Positions 6,713 through 63,958 of a stretch of 64,000 nt of DNA are shown here, in pieces. The first letter of the stretch is position 1, and every line of letters starts with the position of its first letter. Both the position numbers and the translations under genes were made by a program. The stretch spans positions 1 to 64,000 of IMG/VR virus record IMGVR_UViG_3300018080_008436; one strand, given 5' to 3'. The notes beneath the pieces were generated by a model. The model was not told the origin of the DNA, made no database searches, and worked only from the letters and a program-made list of their open reading frames with translations.

Positions 6713-7438
6713 TTATGCGCATGATAAGTCAAGCTGATATTCCTCGGGTACGTCATCATCACATTCAGTGGGTAGCTGATCCTCAAACCATTTACCAAAC
6801 TTATCAACATGACAGAGCTTGTTTTTGTTCTGGCTTTTGTAGCTCCAGTTACAACCGTTGATGATGTAACCATTACAGTTGAGGTACATTTCTCCTTCGC
6901 TAATACCCCAGTCGTCCAATTCGATTTCTGGGATACAAACCTTTCGGTCTCCCCCATAACCATGTTCTTCTGCAAGACCTTCAATAATGGGTTCGTAGTA
7001 ATATGATTCATGGCTATGCTTCCGACTAAAGAACGTCAAGCCGTCAAGGAGTTCTGTGTCATACATTCCCTCTCCTGCATGAAACTGATCGTTGGATACA
7101 TTGACAGAGCATGAGTCTTTTTCGATACAGTAGTTATACCATTGGAGGCAAGCCACTACGAATTCCTCTGTGATTTTCGCGCCGTTGGTTGCGATGTAGA
7201 AAGAGCCTACATCGACATTATTCTGCCGACAACGAATCAAGGTTTCTTTAATGGCCTTGACATTCAAAGAGGGTTCGCCCCCAGTAAATGTGATTGTACC
7301 GATTGAGGAAACTTGATCGATCAAACTATGGATGTGTTTGATATCGATGGTTTTGTTTTGGGCTTTACCCCGAAGACAGTGGGAACATTGGAACTGACAG
7401 CGTCGGGTAACTTCGATCATCAAATCTCTAACATACAT
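6713..7438 (-). CDS. radical SAM protein
   Basis: CQFQCSHC (CxxxCxxC), TGGEP, ATNG. Confidence 0.9.
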   Translation of the reverse strand: MYVRDLMIEVTRRCQFQCSHCLRGKAQNKTIDIKHIHSLIDQVSSIGTITFTGGEPSLNVKAIKETLIRCRQNNVDVGSFYIATNGAKITEEFVVACLQWYNYCIEKDSCSVNVSNDQFHAGEGMYDTELLDGLTFFSRKHSHESYYYEPIIEGLAEEHGYGGDRKVCIPEIELDDWGISEGEMYLNCNGYIINGCNWSYKSQNKNKLCHVDKFGKWFEDQLPTECDDDVPEEYQLDLSCA

Positions 7439-8946: not shown

Positions 8947-9599
8947 TGTCTTTCTTCCTCTTGTTACTATCAACATAGCATAGATATGGTTGATGTCAAT
9001 CCTATTTAGAAAAAATAAATGAGATCGAGGAGGGTCTCCAGGATCGAGGAGGTATTTCTAAAAAGAGTACTACTGTTTTAATTCTGTAGTACTCTTTTTG
9101 AAAATCCTGGTGTGTATAATCACACTTCTTCACACCTCAAAATCAGGCTTATTATAATAGAATATAATATTATAATACAGAGAGATGAGCTTGATCTTAT
9201 ATAAAAAATAGAAAGAGAGTATATAGAAAGGTATCAAAACAATGGTATCAACACATTAGACACGTAAAGATACACGTGAAGATACACGTGGGCTATTATA
9301 CCAGCACGGGGTTTTCTAAAAAGAGTACTTCTGTTTTGATTGAGTAGTACTCTTTTTGAAAGGTCTGCTGGAACTCGAAGGCGCTTGGCGGGAATGAGAA
9401 ATAAAAAAGCCCTCTCGCAGATTGAGAGGGCTTTGCGCAGAGGAGGGAGGGGCCTCTGCATTGTGGAAAATTGAGGGCCTAAGGTCGGGCCTCAGGAGGG
9501 AGAGCGACCTCCCTAACTTTTCTTGCTAGTCGCTATTGCAATTCAGTCACCTCATTGATTGTTAAATACCTGCGTCCAGCTTCCCTCGGATCAGGAATT

Positions 9600-13683: not shown

Positions 13684-13831
13684 TGGAGGCCCCTTCAGGA
13701 GTTCAACCTGAATCTTCTCATCTGGATCGCAATGCATGCCCTTTACGACGAGCCATTTGCAACTAACTACTTACCCTGCTGTGTCCAACAACGTAACCGT
13801 CCGAGATGCTTTATCATTAAGCTAAGGGGCT
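13684..13831 (-). ncRNA. tRNA-like RNA with ~70-nt insert in place of anticodon loop
   Basis: Acceptor GCCCCT/AGGGGC, D arm GCTT/AAGC, T arm TCAGG-TTGAACT-CCTGA, 3' CCA; first gene after promoter 13871-13898. Confidence 0.65.
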
Positions 13832-21993: not shown

Positions 21994-22211
21994 TCTCTCT
22001 CCTCCTTAGTCGCCCCCTACTGAGCAATCGGTAGGGGGTTTTCTTTTGCCTGGACCTTTCCTGGACAGCGGCTCGCCTTTCAAAAAGAGTACTACTGTTT
22101 TAATTCTGTAGTACTCTTTTTAGAAGAGATAGGGCACACCAGGCTACCCATCAGGGCACAAAAAAAGCCCCTACCGAAGTAGGGGCCAGGGAATAAACAC
22201 GAGGAGATGGT

Positions 22212-23476: not shown

Positions 23477-23699
23477 TACTGTACCCCCTAAATGACATAC
23501 TCATTATACATTCCGTGCATGTCATTCGGTTTCCTCCCTTGAAACATTTTTCCTTTTACGAACCCATGACAAGAACATATAAATGATAATCATTGTCATG
23601 GTTGAGAAAATATAGCCCCAGACCAATCCCCTCAAATAGAAGTACATCGGATCTGGATTATTCCAATCAGTTAATAACATTTTCTTTCTCCTGTTAAAT

Positions 23700-23896
23700 T
23701 GGCAGGCTGGGTTGGATTCGAACCAACGTCCCTTCGTATACTACTCTCCGCTTTCCTGTCTAGCCTCAACAGTACATATCACTTTGAGTGACTCCAGATG
23801 TTTCATTTGACTTTTGGAACTAACCGCGTATCAGTTCCTACTAACAGACTACTTTATCCTTCTGTCTAACGATGCTCTCCTATGAGCTACCAGCCC
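23700..23896 (-). ncRNA. tRNA-like RNA with ~120-nt structured insert in place of anticodon loop
   Basis: GGGCTGG/CCAGCCT acceptor, GCTC/GAGC D arm, GTTGG-TTCGAAT-CCAAC T arm, GCCA end. Confidence 0.75.
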
Positions 23897-23904
23897 GTTA
23901 AATT

Positions 23905-24108
23905 TTACTCGACCTCTTCGATTGTGATCTTAAATTTCTTTCCGACAGGTTGTTTCGCCAACCACTCATCAAATTTGTCAAGCTCCACGTGAGCCTCTTC
24001 AGTTATCGAAGGAGAACAAAGCAACAGAAGGGTTGCGTTATATCTTTCAAGAACGTCAGGACACTCCTCTTGATTGTACTCGACATGTGCTTCGGTTTCA
24101 AATTTCAT
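23905..24108 (-). CDS. hypothetical protein
   Basis: SD AGGAG. Confidence 0.6.
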   Translation of the reverse strand: MKFETEAHVEYNQEECPDVLERYNATLLLLCSPSITEEAHVELDKFDEWLAKQPVGKKFKITIEEVE

Positions 24109-45333: not shown

Positions 45334-47364
45334 TCATACCCGAAATGCATTTGCAAGTTCTTGTTCCTCAAGCCATTCATTGAACTTGTGTTCATAACCT
45401 TCAATAATGCTTGACCCCATGCTCTTTTTTGTGATTTGGTATCCACATTCTCTAAAGATTTCAACCATTCTGTCTTGACTGATCTCTTTGGTTTCATTCA
45501 ACTCTTTGGCAACGACTTTGTAGAGATCGGTGTTTTCCTTAAGAAGTCTCATCGCAGTCTTCTTAGACTCTTCGATCAGACTCTCCAACTCTTCATTGGT
45601 CTCTCCTAGAGCCGTATTGTAAGAGCATGAACCGTTGGTTGTCTCTGAGACTACTTTTGATAATGTAGACCCCATAGCGTTCCTCCTAATATATCTAGCG
45701 AGGGCTACGGTTGCATTATCAACATCCAGATAACAACCTGAGGATCTTGACGACTTTCCAAAGACCATTTCTTCTGCACAAAGTCCAGCAAGCCAAACAG
45801 CGCACTGTTTCTTTATATTGTCTTCTGAGTCGATAATTTGATGAGGCATAACATATCCACCCATTTTACCAGAAAGAAGTGAGACAGTATACAATGGAGC
45901 ATGTCCAAAGAGTAATCCATAGACAACTGCATGCCCTGCTTCATGAACTGAAACATGAGTGATGAAATCATACTTTTGGAGCTTTTCCCATTTGATGAAG
46001 TCAATTTCTCCAACATGATTTTTCTCATATGAGAATTTACGACCAGTCAGAACAATCTGCTTATCTTCATAAGAGACCTTAGCCTTTCTGAATTTTTCAC
46101 CAGCGATAAGTGCTTTCAGGATGAGTTCTGTTACACCTGATTCCAGAATGGATTTGATCTCTGAGAAGACTGGTCTTGTCCCTTGAGTTGGATAAACACC
46201 ATTTCTATAGATCAAATCATAGATGGAGTCCTCAATAGTCAGAGTAATTTTAAAATCTTTTTTGATATTCTGTACATACTCATCACATTTCATCTTGATG
46301 ATTGTTCTAAAGTTAGCTTCAGACAATGCAGGATAAATCACATGATTGTTCCCAAGACGAGCAATCTGTTCTGGTAAGAAGACATCCCCCAATGATCTTT
46401 TGATCGTATGGATATTGATGTGTTTGCAAAGTTCATGGTAGTAATCAGCAGGGATGTCATTTCCGAACTGAGTTGAAACATTATAAGCGTTGTCCAAATT
46501 TCCACTTACGAAAACCAACAGCTTACTGTAGTCATGTTCGGTATGAGTGAATTTCTCTTTGTCGTCTTTGAATTCTTTGACCAGATCGATCAGTTTCTCT
46601 TTGGGCCAGTTGGCGATCTCGTAAGCTGACTCAGTCAGTTTGAGTACTCTTTTGATTCTTCTGGCATTGTAAAGACATCCACTTCTGAAGGCATATGAAC
46701 TAAGAGTAGGGGGTTTTGATTCTTCTTCTTCATCATCATCATCTTCATCATCTGTGAGAGGGACCTCACGCTTGTCAAGAATTGTATCAACAAATTTTTT
46801 ACTTGAGCTTTTCTTTGGAATCTTCCCTTCTTTCTGTCTTTCGTTATACTCTTTGAGACGTTTGAGATAGTCCTCATAATCAAGTGTCATCTCATAGAGC
46901 ATGTCGATTGAGACGGTAGATCTGATCTTTCCATCTGAGAGCAGTTCCCAAGTGTCCATATAAGGAAGGTTACGCATCTTGCGTCCAGATTCATCCTTAC
47001 ATCTAAACCGTTGCATTTCGTCAAGCAGAAGGATTCCAGGTTTACCCTCATCGATAACGCCTTCCAGTTTGTCGATGAGCATTTTGGATGCAAGTGAGGA
47101 CTCATCGAATGTAACTTCGCAATAGTCCTCTTTCATATGAAGAAGGTCTCTGAGTGTTCTGACCAGATCTGTTTTACCAACCCCAGTCATACCCCAGAGA
47201 CAAATGATAGTAGGATGGTTGACGATCTCAGGTACGCAGTACCATGCCTCCATCTCACTAATGATTCTATCTATAACCTCGTCTAACCCAACAAACTTTT
47301 TCTTGAGTTCTTCGCCTGCGTTAGCGAGTTCGTTTTTTCTTTTCTCAATAACTTTGAGGTCCAT
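45334..47364 (-). CDS. AAA+ ATPase fused to peptidase M41 (soluble FtsH-like protease)
   Basis: Walker A GMTGVGKT, Walker B LLLDE, HEAGH zinc motif, LAG..AEE..FG. Confidence 0.85.
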   Translation of the reverse strand: MDLKVIEKRKNELANAGEELKKKFVGLDEVIDRIISEMEAWYCVPEIVNHPTIICLWGMTGVGKTDLVRTLRDLLHMKEDYCEVTFDESSLASKMLIDKLEGVIDEGKPGILLLDEMQRFRCKDESGRKMRNLPYMDTWELLSDGKIRSTVSIDMLYEMTLDYEDYLKRLKEYNERQKEGKIPKKSSSKKFVDTILDKREVPLTDDEDDDDEEEESKPPTLSSYAFRSGCLYNARRIKRVLKLTESAYEIANWPKEKLIDLVKEFKDDKEKFTHTEHDYSKLLVFVSGNLDNAYNVSTQFGNDIPADYYHELCKHINIHTIKRSLGDVFLPEQIARLGNNHVIYPALSEANFRTIIKMKCDEYVQNIKKDFKITLTIEDSIYDLIYRNGVYPTQGTRPVFSEIKSILESGVTELILKALIAGEKFRKAKVSYEDKQIVLTGRKFSYEKNHVGEIDFIKWEKLQKYDFITHVSVHEAGHAVVYGLLFGHAPLYTVSLLSGKMGGYVMPHQIIDSEDNIKKQCAVWLAGLCAEEMVFGKSSRSSGCYLDVDNATVALARYIRRNAMGSTLSKVVSETTNGSCSYNTALGETNEELESLIEESKKTAMRLLKENTDLYKVVAKELNETKEISQDRMVEIFRECGYQITKKSMGSSIIEGYEHKFNEWLEEQELANAFRV

Positions 47365-57036: not shown

Positions 57037-57687
57037 TTATTCTTCGACAACGTCAATATGATCGCCTTTGGCTGAATTACAATGCTGACACATAGTTTGC
57101 ATGTTACTAAGACAGTCCTTACCGCCCTTTGATCTTGGCATGATATGATCTTTTGTAATCAAAACCTTTTCACCATCCTTCATGCCATAAAGATTGAAAT
57201 GCCATCTATTGTCGCCTGGGTTTTTAACCTTCAAGAAGAACGTTCCTTCCAGACCGCAGATGGTACAGACACAACCTTTCTCTTTGAACGTCCTGAGTCT
57301 CAAGGAATTCATTTTGATGTCATCACCATCAAACTCTTTGAGTTGTGGTTTCATGCCATATCGTTTCTTGACATGTTGAAGAACCTCATCAACTGAGTAC
57401 TTCTTTTCACCATACAAAATTCTTGAAGGTTTCTTCTTATTCTGTCTCTTTCTTCTTTGGGTCTTCGAAGGGGTGCTGAATCCTTTTGACGAAACCGTAA
57501 AAAGATATGTGCCTCGGTTGTCGATGATTTTGATATTGAAACCTTGCTCCAAAACAAATGCACCAACAGCATTCAGCATGATCTCATTAGTCCAATTGTC
57601 GAAAAACATCCCACTTTTCCAACCGAAGTCATCGAAAGCTTCTTGAACCTTTTTATCCCCCTGTTTACAAATTACTCTAACTCTCAT
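57037..57687 (-). CDS. HNH endonuclease domain protein
   Basis: CTIC...TKDHIMPRSKGG....N....C..CNSAKG. Confidence 0.88.
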   Translation of the reverse strand: MRVRVICKQGDKKVQEAFDDFGWKSGMFFDNWTNEIMLNAVGAFVLEQGFNIKIIDNRGTYLFTVSSKGFSTPSKTQRRKRQNKKKPSRILYGEKKYSVDEVLQHVKKRYGMKPQLKEFDGDDIKMNSLRLRTFKEKGCVCTICGLEGTFFLKVKNPGDNRWHFNLYGMKDGEKVLITKDHIMPRSKGGKDCLSNMQTMCQHCNSAKGDHIDVVEE

Positions 57688-57688
57688 A

Positions 57689-58153
57689 TCAGGCATAAGT
57701 CTCCATCTTAAGCACTTCCAATGCTTTTCTGAGTGCTCCCATAACAGGAACATCAATGTTGTCAATATCGAACCATTTCAGTTCTGAGCACTTATCGTGC
57801 TCCATGATATTCGGAACTCCCCGCCAATCTGTTGCTTTGAAGAAGAGAGTGATGTAATGAAGACCTTCTTTTTCGAAGATGACATTCTCGAAGCAAACCT
57901 TCTTTATGTTGATCAGATCGACTCCGATCTCTTCTTTGACTTCTCTCTGGCAACAGGTCAGGAAGTCTTCTCCAATGTCCATATGTCCACCAGGGCAGGC
58001 CCATTTCTCTGACTGGTGAGATCCTTTCCTCTTCATTAGAAGGATCTTTCTGACATGATAGGGGTCATGTTGGACATGGTGTATGAACATGATACCAACT
58101 CCAACCTTGGGGGTATCCTGTTTCTTCTTCATCGGACTGAAATCAACGCTCAT
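57689..58153 (-). CDS. Nudix hydrolase (MutT/NUDT15-like)
   Basis: PGGHMDIGE....CCQREVKEEIG; HYITLF; EHDKC. Confidence 0.9.
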   Translation of the reverse strand: MSVDFSPMKKKQDTPKVGVGIMFIHHVQHDPYHVRKILLMKRKGSHQSEKWACPGGHMDIGEDFLTCCQREVKEEIGVDLINIKKVCFENVIFEKEGLHYITLFFKATDWRGVPNIMEHDKCSELKWFDIDNIDVPVMGALRKALEVLKMETYA

Positions 58154-62784: not shown

Positions 62785-63078
62785 TTACGTTAAGTCTGTG
62801 TCTTCATGCCAGTCTTCTGGATCTTTGAAGGCAAACTGAAATAGTTCTCGAACATCCCCTTTAATATACTCCTGTTTCTTCTTATCCTCAATATTTGAGA
62901 CATACTCTTCAAGACTAGAAGCTACCTCTGAGAGGAATTCCTCAAACTCACTATGATACCCCCAACGATTAAGGGAGCAACGCATGATCTCTGCAACCAA
63001 CTTGTCAGTTTTTAGCTCCACAGAGACTTTAATTTCATTGTCAGAATCTTCGAATTCCAAATCAATAGTTTGCATCAC
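62785..63078 (-). CDS. hypothetical protein
   Basis: ORF in operon. Confidence 0.65.
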
Positions 63079-63958
63079 AAAAACCTATCTTTTGCCACAG
63101 TTTGTTGTAATCAACATTTGCCGCAACCTTATCCATACCCATGGGATCAGTTCCCCATCCACCATCTCTTCGATAAGGTCTTCCTTCTACCCAACCGAAT
63201 ATCTCTGGATGGAAATGACTCACTGCCGCCGCTGGATCGTGGAACTTCTTCTCACTATGCTTTGCAAGATACATGTCCATAGCTTCAACAAACAGTTCTC
63301 CTGCTCTGTCTCTGACCTTGAGCGTAGGAGCAACCTGTTCATGAACATCCTGGTTGTAAAGAATCGTATGGCATACGTTCTTGCCGACGAATCTTCTATC
63401 ACCAATAAGCGCATTGACGAATTCAATCGTTCCCTTAACATCACCATTCATATTGAAGGTCGGGACAGTGATTTTATCTCTGAACTTGTCAAGAACGGGA
63501 ACCTTGTGCTTCCCATGCAGATTGTATGACAGGAACCCTCCCTGCATAGTTGCCTTGGGGATTGTTGAATTTGAATAAGGGTAATACTCTTTTAGGTAAT
63601 TACCCGTACTGATTGGAGGTCCACAGATAAAAAGATGGCAATCAGGGTCTTTATCTCTAGCTTCCTTCATCAATTCTGCACCATCACCATCATGGGTATG
63701 TTCCAAAGGATATCCGTACTTCTTGAGCATCTTGTAGTGAATGCTTCCTGAAGATCTTTTGTTCCTGTCAAGCTTTCCAACTCCGATAGGAAAGTCTAAG
63801 TCAAGTTGATCTCGAATCAAGTGACAAACAGCAACTTGATCTGCATCTCCAGGTGAGATGTTGACGAGCTTAATGTCTACTCCTGACGAGATAAACCAAA
63901 GCAGAGCAAAAAAATCATCGGGGTCTCTTCCGATATCAGTATCAATTATCATTTTCAT
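63062..63958 (-). CDS. nucleoside hydrolase (IU-NH family-like)
   Basis: IIDTDIGRDPDD; GP; QGG; FN; FHDP. Confidence 0.85.
   Translation of the reverse strand: MKMIIDTDIGRDPDDFFALLWFISSGVDIKLVNISPGDADQVAVCHLIRDQLDLDFPIGVGKLDRNKRSSGSIHYKMLKKYGYPLEHTHDGDGAELMKEARDKDPDCHLFICGPPISTGNYLKEYYPYSNSTIPKATMQGGFLSYNLHGKHKVPVLDKFRDKITVPTFNMNGDVKGTIEFVNALIGDRRFVGKNVCHTILYNQDVHEQVAPTLKVRDRAGELFVEAMDMYLAKHSEKKFHDPAAAVSHFHPEIFGWVEGRPYRRDGGWGTDPMGMDKVAANVDYNKLWQKIGFCDANY

What the first reader, a model, noticed from the sequence alone, without database searches (positions are those of the whole stretch)
23700..23896. tRNA scaffold 2: canonical arms carrying a ~120-nt structured insert
Seen: canonical acceptor, D and T arms with GCCA end; the stem TCGT/ACGA encloses hairpins (GGAACTGA/TTAGTTCC, TCACT/AGTGA) and, as in scaffold 1, CAA-ATG opening a short ORF (MKHLESLKVICTVEARQESGE-stop) that ends just before the 3' stem. 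Two independent examples with unrelated inserts suggest a class of tRNA-scaffolded phage RNAs. The ORFs may be chance.
Basis: partly seen in the sequence, partly recalled or inferred. Interest (0 to 1): 0.8.

Follow-up and report, generated by a model that had tools for sequence, protein, structure and literature searches.

The report
Huge-phage tRNA gene with a 124-base insert
A roughly half-megabase marine-sediment phage carries a well-formed tRNA gene split in its anticodon loop by 124 extra bases. This feature has been reported before in huge phages and is still unexplained, and nothing here shows how, or whether, the extra piece is removed.

Summary
Window 23896-23700 (minus strand, 197 nt) has a complete 7-bp acceptor stem, D arm, canonical T arm and G-CCA end. 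A 4-bp stem (UCGU/ACGA) encloses 124 nt inserted between anticodon-loop positions 32 and 33.

Removing the insert gives an ARAGORN-recognisable tRNA-Thr(AGU) whose loop, UUAGUAU, resembles that of ordinary phage tRNA-Thr(AGU). Three features of that product are atypical:
- The acceptor is not Thr-like.
- Nucleotide 26 is missing.
- Pair 27-43 is A.A.

The insert is not a known RNA family. It is too short for group I and lacks its core, and it has no bulge-helix-bulge motif. It folds no better than shuffled sequence apart from one 9-bp hairpin. The 21-codon ORF has no Shine-Dalgarno and is not conserved.

Only DNA contigs were available, no RNA reads. They show no insert-free allele.

Insert-bearing tRNA genes ('enigmatic introns') are already published for Lak megaphages and jumbo phages. 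This case differs: the insert lies 5' of the anticodon, has no nested tRNA, and probably shares ancestry with the body of a tRNA-like RNA in another 467-kb phage contig.

Best reading: the element is cut out as a CCA-ended tRNA-like RNA and does not self-splice. Protein-dependent splicing to tRNA-Thr(AGU) is the main rival. I rate it a new variant of a known kind, of moderate interest.

The parts
23700..23896 (-). Whole tRNA-framed element, 197 nt, from G1 to the encoded CCA end
   Evidence: ARAGORN intron mode; custom frame scan; sequence
23890..23896 (-). Acceptor stem, 5' strand GGGCUGG
   Evidence: Pairs 7/7 (G1.U72 wobble) with 23704-23710
23874..23887 (-). D arm: stem GCUC/GAGC with a short 6-nt loop AUAGGA containing GG
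23868..23872 (-). 5' strand of the anticodon stem (UCGU) plus U32. No nucleotide 26 lies between the D stem and this stem.
   Evidence: drawing: A27.A43 mismatch above 4 pairs
23744..23867 (-). The 124-nt insert, lying between anticodon-loop positions 32 and 33
   Evidence: no Rfam family; fold z -0.76
23839..23867 (-). 5' end of the insert: blocks AGACAGAAGG, AAAGUAGU and CUGUUAGUA, shared with L065:951-1103
   Evidence: Collinear alignment, 0 of 4000 random real segments score as high
23816..23838 (-). The only clearly stable hairpin of the insert (9 bp, 5-nt loop)
   Evidence: -9.5 kcal/mol, z -4.3
23741..23806 (-). 21-codon ORF (MKHLESLKVICTVEARQESGE) with its stop. Probably not a gene.
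   Evidence: Translation. No Shine-Dalgarno upstream, while the next gene has AGGAGA. The peptide is not conserved in the L065 relative.
23732..23752 (-). 3' junction block AGCGG-N4-UAGUAUACGAAG, shared with L065
23734..23743 (-). Rest of the anticodon loop (U33, A34 G35 U36 at 23742-23740, A37, U38) and the 3' strand of the stem (ACGA)
   Evidence: The loop UUAGUAU compares with UUAGUAA/CUAGUAA of ordinary phage tRNA-Thr(AGU).
23711..23727 (-). T arm GUUGG-UUCGAAU-CCAAC
23700..23710 (-). Acceptor 3' strand CCAGCCU, discriminator G, and CCA
23905..24108 (-). Upstream 67-codon ORF. Its stop lies 8 nt before the element.
23522..23680 (-). Downstream 52-codon ORF. Its AGGAGA ribosome site (23687-23692) starts 8 nt after the CCA end.
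13684..13830 (-). 'Scaffold 1': a second, less canonical tRNA-framed element with a 74-75-nt insert at the same side of the anticodon loop
   Evidence: ARAGORN at lowered threshold; sequence and fold

Best explanation
This is a tRNA-derived gene of a ~0.5-Mb marine-sediment phage. Its anticodon arm is interrupted by 124 nt of foreign sequence, inserted just 5' of the anticodon. It is of the same general kind as the published 'enigmatic introns' of megaphage tRNAs.

Shown:
- The acceptor, D and T parts are intact and canonical.
- The gene sits between two small ORFs exactly as the three ordinary tRNAs of this region do.
- The insert belongs to no known ribozyme or intron family and has no significant fold.
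- The insert is probably related to the body of a free-standing tRNA-like RNA in another megaphage.

Inferred:
- The element is transcribed within the operon.
- The cell's tRNA-end enzymes (RNase P at G1, 3' trimming to the encoded CCA) recognise the acceptor/T-arm unit and cut it out as a ~197-nt CCA-ended tRNA-like RNA. This also separates the two flanking mRNAs.
- It does not splice itself.
- Unless the phage supplies a dedicated cutting and joining enzyme, it stays unspliced and does not decode.
For: The frame is far beyond chance and carries all universal tRNA marks.

The genomic layout matches tRNA-Leu, tRNA-Met and scaffold 1. In each, a stop codon lies a few nt upstream, and a ribosome site and ATG follow a few nt after CCA.

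There is no Rfam match at any threshold, group I included. At 124 nt the insert is well below the ~200-nt minimum of natural group I introns (established knowledge).

The insert fold is at chance. Anticodon-insert pairing is also at chance.

The product after removing the insert is an atypical tRNA:
- It has no N26, an A27.A43 mismatch and a 6-nt D loop.
- Its acceptor is GGG.../G73, whereas nearly all of the ~70 phage tRNA-Thr sampled begin GC (G1-C72, C2-G71).
- Its acceptor and T arm are instead identical to insert-free tRNA(CAU) genes of other viral contigs.

The insert aligns collinearly with L065:951-1103. That region folds as a tRNA-like RNA with a non-decoding loop.

Precedents for non-decoding tRNA-like RNAs in phage tRNA clusters:
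- T4 rnaC, which has a canonical T arm (PMC3014915)
- four paralogous tRNA-framed RNAs in L057
Against: No RNA data exist for this phage in the runs served, so processing, stability and lack of splicing are all inferred.

Removing exactly 124 nt restores a loop almost identical to that of genuine phage tRNA-Thr(AGU). ACU is among the commonest Thr codons of the phage. Both points favour a spliced, decoding tRNA.

The helices of the L065 relative are not kept in this insert, so a conserved 'cargo' function is doubtful.

Only 64 kb of ~525 kb was visible, so a phage-encoded splicing enzyme cannot be excluded.
Confidence: 0.42

Rival explanations
1. It is a true intron. A protein endonuclease plus an RNA ligase (phage- or host-encoded, for example RtcB-type) removes the 124 nt and yields a decoding tRNA-Thr(AGU) that supplies the phage's frequent ACU codons.
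For: Removing the insert gives an ARAGORN-positive tRNA with U33, AGU and A37. The loop matches ordinary phage tRNA-Thr(AGU), which is the second commonest A34 tRNA in sampled phage arrays (6 of 1168). ACU and ACA are the top Thr codons. In Lak phages the same tRNA gene occurs with and without its insert (PMC6784885).
Against: The acceptor lacks the G1-C72/C2-G71 found in nearly all sampled phage tRNA-Thr. The product has no N26, an A.A mismatch and a short D loop. There is no bulge-helix-bulge, and no insert-anticodon pairing above chance. Bacteria are not known to have a tRNA splicing endonuclease (established knowledge). No insert-free allele appears in viral, metagenome or run contigs.
Confidence: 0.3
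2. It is a decaying relic: a tRNA gene killed by a rearrangement or insertion. The RNA has no role of its own beyond perhaps still being a processing site.
For: The insert is unstructured. The helices of its L065 relative are lost. The anticodon arm is imperfect.
Against: All 20 pairs of the acceptor, D and T stems, the T loop, G18G19, U8 and CCA are intact, which neutral decay would not preserve. A second element of the same build lies in the same genome. The phage genome is tightly packed here.
Confidence: 0.17
3. It is a tRNA-scaffolded functional RNA. The insert is the working part (regulatory, decoy or antisense RNA), and the tRNA frame provides processing and stability.
For: The insert has conserved blocks at both ends shared with a tRNA-like RNA of another megaphage that has a different frame. 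Several tRNA-framed RNAs with the same acceptor but different middles occur in L065, and there are four paralogues in L057. T4 rnaC is a precedent.
Against: There is no significant fold. Complementarity to anything else in the window does not exceed 11 nt, which is chance level. The family is only two members, with pairings not conserved.
Confidence: 0.06
4. It is a self-splicing (group I-like) mini-intron.
For: It lies in the anticodon loop. With the ARAGORN boundaries, the 5' exon ends in U and the insert ends in G.
Against: No match to Rfam group I or any ribozyme, even at E up to 10 on a 241-nt search. The insert is 124 nt with no core helices and no significant fold.
Confidence: 0.03
5. 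It is a tmRNA-like or peptide-coding RNA: tRNA-like ends around a translated 21-codon ORF.
For: An ORF is present. An A-rich...GUAGUC word in the insert loosely resembles the region before tmRNA resume codons (from memory, a lead only).
Against: There is no G3.U70, and a full D stem is present. ARAGORN tmRNA mode and both Rfam tmRNA models fail. There is no Shine-Dalgarno. The ORF is not conserved in the L065 relative.
Confidence: 0.02

Closest known systems
'Enigmatic introns' in tRNA genes of Lak megaphages (Devoto et al. 2019, PMC6784885); also reported for jumbo phages in PMC13037316
   Same: The phage genome is about half a megabase. Otherwise normal tRNA genes carry one continuous 79-114-nt (here 124-nt) insert in the anticodon loop. 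There is no Rfam family and the mechanism is unknown.
   Different: Lak inserts are placed 3' of the anticodon (37/38). They begin with a small hairpin and contain a nested T arm or mini-tRNA. Here the insert is 5' of the anticodon (32/33), has no nested T arm and shows no sequence similarity. Lak phages have insert-free alleles; none was found here.
tRNA-like RNA at L065:951-1103 (IMGVR_UViG_3300021431_002946, 467 kb)
   Same: Collinear sequence blocks match the insert from its first base through UAUACGAAG (0 of 4000 random segments score as high). It also ends in a T arm, an acceptor strand and CCA.
   Different: It has its own acceptor 5' strand (GAAAGAA/UUCUUUC), an expanded D-like hairpin, a 7-bp arm with loop GAAGCUG and a long variable arm. 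The shared blocks form helices there that are not formed in the window's element.
Group I introns in bacterial tRNA anticodon loops (cyanobacterial tRNA-Leu(UAA), tRNA-fMet; Azoarcus tRNA-Ile)
   Same: The position is in the anticodon loop. A U precedes the insert and a G ends it.
   Different: The insert is about half the minimal size, has no catalytic core, and gives no Rfam hit.
Phage T4 species 1 RNA (rnaC), a stable RNA of unknown role in the T4 tRNA cluster
   Same: It is encoded among phage tRNA genes. A canonical T arm and terminal pairing flank a non-tRNA body.
   Different: rnaC has no D arm and no encoded CCA, and it is strongly structured (z -4.6). No sequence similarity was seen.
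tmRNA
   Same: tRNA-like ends enclose an internal ORF.
   Different: This element has no G3.U70 and no pseudoknots, has a D stem, and is 197 nt. Detectors are negative.

Membership tests
Insert-bearing ('intron-containing') tRNA genes of huge phages | Encoded in a phage genome above 200 kb | tested here: met
   The window is identical to a 476,248-bp IMG/VR contig and lies in a 524,692-bp metagenome contig
Insert-bearing ('intron-containing') tRNA genes of huge phages | Removing one continuous stretch in the anticodon loop restores a full cloverleaf | tested here: met
   ARAGORN intron mode and ARAGORN on the insert-free sequence
Insert-bearing ('intron-containing') tRNA genes of huge phages | Insert has no match in Rfam | tested here: met
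Insert-bearing ('intron-containing') tRNA genes of huge phages | Lak-type anatomy: insert 3' of the anticodon, with a nested T arm or mini-tRNA | tested here: not met
   The insert lies at 32/33. There is only one T-loop motif in the element.
Insert-bearing ('intron-containing') tRNA genes of huge phages | Same gene also found without the insert | tested here: inconclusive
   Only identical copies were found. No skipping joint appears in DNA contigs. No close relative of the phage is available.
Group I intron | Conserved catalytic core (P3-P8, G-binding site), i.e. a match to the Rfam group I model | tested here: not met
   No hit at E up to 10
Group I intron | U before the 5' splice site and G as the last intron base | tested here: met
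   ARAGORN boundaries ...CGUU | ...GAGAG | U. About a 1-in-16 chance event.
Archaeal/eukaryal protein-spliced tRNA intron | Bulge-helix-bulge at the two junctions, or an anticodon-intron helix | tested here: not met
   No 3-nt bulges separated by 4 bp can be drawn (inspection). Loop-insert duplex is no better than shuffles.
Archaeal/eukaryal protein-spliced tRNA intron | Splicing endonuclease and ligase available in phage or host | not testable with these tools
   Only 64 of ~525 kb is visible and the host is unknown. None was found among 20 window proteins scanned.
tmRNA | G3.U70 alanine identity pair; D loop without a stem; pseudoknots; detector match | tested here: not met
   G3-C70 and a 4-bp D stem. 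ARAGORN and Rfam are negative.
Decoding tRNA-Thr | Anticodon loop with U33, NGU and A37 | tested here: met
   UUAGUAU after removing the insert, compared
Decoding tRNA-Thr | Acceptor pairs G1-C72 and C2-G71 | tested here: not met
   G1.U72, G2-C71, G3-C70 and G73. Nearly all of ~70 sampled phage tRNA-Thr begin GC.
Decoding tRNA-Thr | Five-pair anticodon stem and nucleotide 26 | tested here: not met
   Four pairs plus A.A, and no N26

The most novel reading that the evidence does not exclude
Megaphages carry a modular class of tRNA-framed non-decoding RNAs. An acceptor/T-arm frame serves as a processing and stability handle, and exchangeable middle modules sit inside it. This element and the L065 RNA would share one such module in different frames.
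Probability: 0.2. Interest if true: 0.8.

Novelty: new variant of a known kind. Interest (0 to 1): 0.5.

Why it matters
Inserts in huge-phage tRNA genes have been reported since 2019, but nobody knows whether or how they are removed. Bacteria are not known to have protein-dependent tRNA splicing.

This example is a clean test object:
- The frame is perfect.
- The insert sits on the unusual 5' side of the anticodon.
- The insert has no ribozyme features.
- It has a probable relative in a second megaphage.

Two outcomes would each be informative. Junction reads would imply a new splicing system in a bacterial virus. A stable 197-nt RNA would add to the old puzzle of non-decoding tRNA-like RNAs in phage tRNA clusters, such as T4 rnaC and rnaD.

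Tried and rejected
1. Known RNA families. Rfam at gathering and lenient thresholds over the whole window, 7 kb and 241 nt gave nothing.

2. Close relatives.
- The exact 5' half, the 3' half, a both-halves-with-gap pattern and the flanking protein returned only identical copies of the same phage.
- The phage database has no relative.
- No cellular genome has a tRNA with this frame.

3. RNA evidence. No RNA run was listed. DNA contigs show no variant or insert-free joint.

4. Anticodon masking by the insert. An 8-bp helix can be drawn, but it is at chance level in S2, S1 and L065.

5. Insert as a decayed tandem duplicate of the tRNA's own halves. By eye, GGUUAGUUCC resembles a T arm and AGGCUAG resembles an acceptor. 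Similarity is at chance. The weak Rfam tRNA hit that uses AGGCUAG is expected by chance.

6. Motif scans built from S1/S2 and S2/L065 blocks. All other hits were ordinary coding sequence. One was the D arm of a normal tRNA-Thr (L156), forced by the pattern.

7. Promoter or terminator inside the insert: none.

8. Antisense targets in the window: none above 11 nt.

9. ARAGORN with a forced minimum intron fuses neighbouring tRNAs, so it was discarded as a control.

10. The first S2-L065 significance value (z 4.4 against shuffles) was too optimistic, because real AT-rich tiles reach similar scores. I re-tested from the insert's first base against 4000 real segments in each direction.

Full report
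**What is there.** The feature lies on the minus strand, 23896 down to 23700, and is 197 nt long.
- It begins with a 7-bp acceptor stem (GGGCUGG/CCAGCCU, G1.U72).
- U8 A9 follow, then a 4-bp D stem around AUAGGA.
- After one A comes UCGU.
- 131 nt later its partner ACGA appears, followed by a 5-6-nt variable region.
- Next is a canonical T arm (GUUGG-UUCGAAU-CCAAC), then the acceptor 3' strand, G73 and an encoded CCA.

Default ARAGORN and Rfam see only the three ordinary tRNAs of the window: Arg-UCU, Met-CAU and Leu-UAA, all on the same strand and all with encoded CCA. ARAGORN in intron mode calls this element tRNA-Thr(AGU) with a 124-nt insert between loop positions 32 and 33.

**Is it more than chance?** I ran my own relaxed scan for acceptor + D + T frames whose halves lie up to 420 nt apart.
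- In both strands of the window it returns only this element and two normal tRNAs.
- Simulated windows give 0.15 hits on average.
- Those criteria do not yet count U8, GG in the D loop, the exact T loop, the CCA end, or the position between two ORFs.

**Source.** The window is the start of IMG/VR contig IMGVR_UViG_3300018080_008436 (476 kb). The same sequence lies in a 524,692-bp metagenome contig. DNA runs that hold it are marine sediment and seawater metagenomes. No phage in the reference collection is close. Genes here are small, packed and nearly all on the minus strand. Each tRNA, this element and 'scaffold 1' are followed within about 10-20 nt by a ribosome site and the ATG of the next gene.

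**The insert.**
- It matches no Rfam family, even when only 241 nt are searched at E up to 10.
- At 124 nt it is far below natural group I introns, and no core can be drawn.
- No bulge-helix-bulge can be drawn at the junctions.
- It does not fold better than shuffled sequence (z -0.76). Only the 9-bp hairpin at 23838-23816 stands out.
- An 8-bp helix between the anticodon loop and an upstream insert segment can be drawn, but such pairing is at chance level here, in scaffold 1 and in the L065 relative.
It has no Shine-Dalgarno, unlike its neighbours, and the related sequence in L065 does not keep it.
- The insert contains no promoter-like or terminator-like site and has no notable complementarity elsewhere in the window.
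- The idea that the insert is the decayed inner halves of a tandem tRNA duplication looked attractive by eye but is not supported.

**The tRNA that would remain.** Taking out the 124 nt gives a 73-nt tRNA that ARAGORN accepts.
- In favour of a decoding tRNA:
  - Its loop, UUAGUAU, is almost that of ordinary phage tRNA-Thr(AGU) (UUAGUAA or CUAGUAA).
  - That species is the second commonest A34 tRNA among 1168 phage tRNAs I sampled.
  - ACU and ACA are the phage's commonest Thr codons.
- Against it:
  - There is no nucleotide 26, pair 27-43 is A.A, and the D loop has only 6 nt.
  - The acceptor (G1.U72, G2-C71, G3-C70, G73) lacks the G1-C72/C2-G71 start that nearly all of ~70 sampled phage tRNA-Thr show.
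  - The acceptor stem and T arm are identical to insert-free tRNA(CAU) genes of eleven other viral contigs.

So the frame is excellent as a tRNA shape, but its identity as a Thr acceptor is doubtful.

**Relatives and the 'class'.** Inserts of 79-114 nt in tRNA anticodon loops were described as 'enigmatic introns' in Lak megaphages, some with insert-free alleles (PMC6784885; sequences). A 2026 survey reports them in many jumbo phages (PMC13037316). The class therefore exists in the literature.

In 131 IMG/VR loci with tRNA arrays, ARAGORN intron mode flags 30 of 1194 tRNAs. These include:
- Lak-like inserts with nested T arms (L026)
- four paralogous tRNA-framed RNAs with covarying acceptor stems (L057)
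- L065 and L089

The present insert differs from the Lak type. It sits 5' of the anticodon and has no nested T arm.

**The one sequence relative I found.** It is L065:951-1103 in a 467-kb contig.
- From the very first base of the insert to UAUACGAAG, collinear blocks align: AGAmAGAAkG, AAAGUAGU, CUGUUAkUA, CCAAA, UGAUA.wGUAC and AGCGG-N4-UAsUAUACGAAG.
- The alignment score was reached by none of 4000 random real segments in either direction (earlier versions).
- In L065 these blocks belong to a free-standing tRNA-like RNA. It has its own 7/7 acceptor, an expanded D-like hairpin, a 7-bp arm with the non-decoding loop GAAGCUG, a long variable arm, a T arm and ACCA.
- Those helices are not preserved in the window's element. 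The similarity therefore speaks for shared ancestry, not for a conserved structure.

Pattern scans built from these blocks found no third member in viral or cellular collections. Scaffold 1 (13830-13684) has the same build, with its insert at 31/32, but a non-canonical T loop (UUGAACU) and a CUCCA end. It shares only a weak motif with this insert.

**How it most likely works.** Shown: an intact acceptor/T/D frame, tRNA-like placement in an operon, and no ribozyme features. Inferred: RNase P and 3'-end trimming release a 197-nt CCA-ended RNA and thereby also separate the flanking mRNAs. The RNA does not splice itself.

Whether a protein system then removes the insert to give tRNA-Thr(AGU) is the main open question. 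I give the unspliced tRNA-like reading 0.42 and protein-dependent splicing 0.30. A dead relic gets 0.17 and a scaffolded working insert 0.06. Self-splicing (0.03) and tmRNA-like or peptide-coding readings (0.02) take the remainder. No RNA run was available, and the single read-laying run could use only DNA contigs, which show no insert-free form.

**Verdict.** This is a real, well-formed, insert-bearing tRNA gene of a huge phage, and a new variant of a published but unexplained kind. The 'structured insert' and the ORF are not supported. The 'scaffold' idea remains possible but unproven. Interest is moderate.

Noticed in passing
window 13684-13830 (-): 'Scaffold 1': a tRNA-framed element with a 74-75-nt insert at loop position 31/32, a non-canonical T loop UUGAACU, a 6-7-bp acceptor and a CUCCA end. 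It is found by ARAGORN only at a lowered threshold. It shares a weak motif (RGUAGUNWGUU) with the insert studied here; that pattern, which I took from these two inserts, has no other match in the window.
   Followed up: partly
window 22078-22126 and 9055-9102: A repeat of about 48 nt (96% identical) that breaks the assembly graphs of the public runs ('goes back' joints). Its function is unknown.
   Followed up: no
L065:470-1460 (IMGVR_UViG_3300021431_002946, 467 kb): A cluster of odd tRNA-framed elements. Two start GAAGUAGUGG, and one (1264-1458) has a perfect GAAGUAG/CUACUUC acceptor and a T-loop variant UGCAAAU. There is also a thrice-repeated ~40-nt element (478-520, 699-735, 915-950), which reads either as a sigma-70-like promoter or as a hairpin with a compensatory change.
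   Followed up: partly
L057:7646-10507 (-) (175-kb contig): Four paralogous tRNA-framed RNAs lie inside a 39-tRNA array. Their acceptor stems covary, and they share a conserved middle containing ...CCGCAAGGGUGGCG...UUACUUAG.
   Followed up: partly
L026:1258-7913: Several tRNA genes have 66-87-nt inserts, and at least two of the inserts contain a nested T arm, like the Lak megaphage introns, but in a 36-kb contig.
   Followed up: no
L135:1909-2047 (-) = phage T4 rnaC: T4 species 1 RNA has a canonical T arm (CCGGG-UUCGAAU-CCCGG) and a very stable fold (z -4.6). rnaD does not (z -0.8).
   Followed up: partly
L002-L013: Eleven viral contigs carry an insert-free tRNA(CAU) whose acceptor stem and T arm are base-for-base those of the window's element. 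No cellular species genome has this frame.
   Followed up: partly
L123:2694-2875 (41-kb contig): Another insert-bearing tRNA-like gene (103-nt insert, 7-bp stem CUCGUCA/UGACGAG). It shares the words AAAGUAG, CAAAAGUCA and AGACAGAA with the window's insert, but in a different order (z 2.4).
   Followed up: partly
window 45334-47364 (-), 6713-7438 (-), 57037-57765 (-), 63062-63958 (-): Context genes with Pfam matches: an FtsH-like AAA+/M41 protease, a radical-SAM protein, an HNH endonuclease and a nucleoside hydrolase. No RNA ligase or tRNA-processing enzyme was found among the 20 proteins scanned.
   Followed up: no
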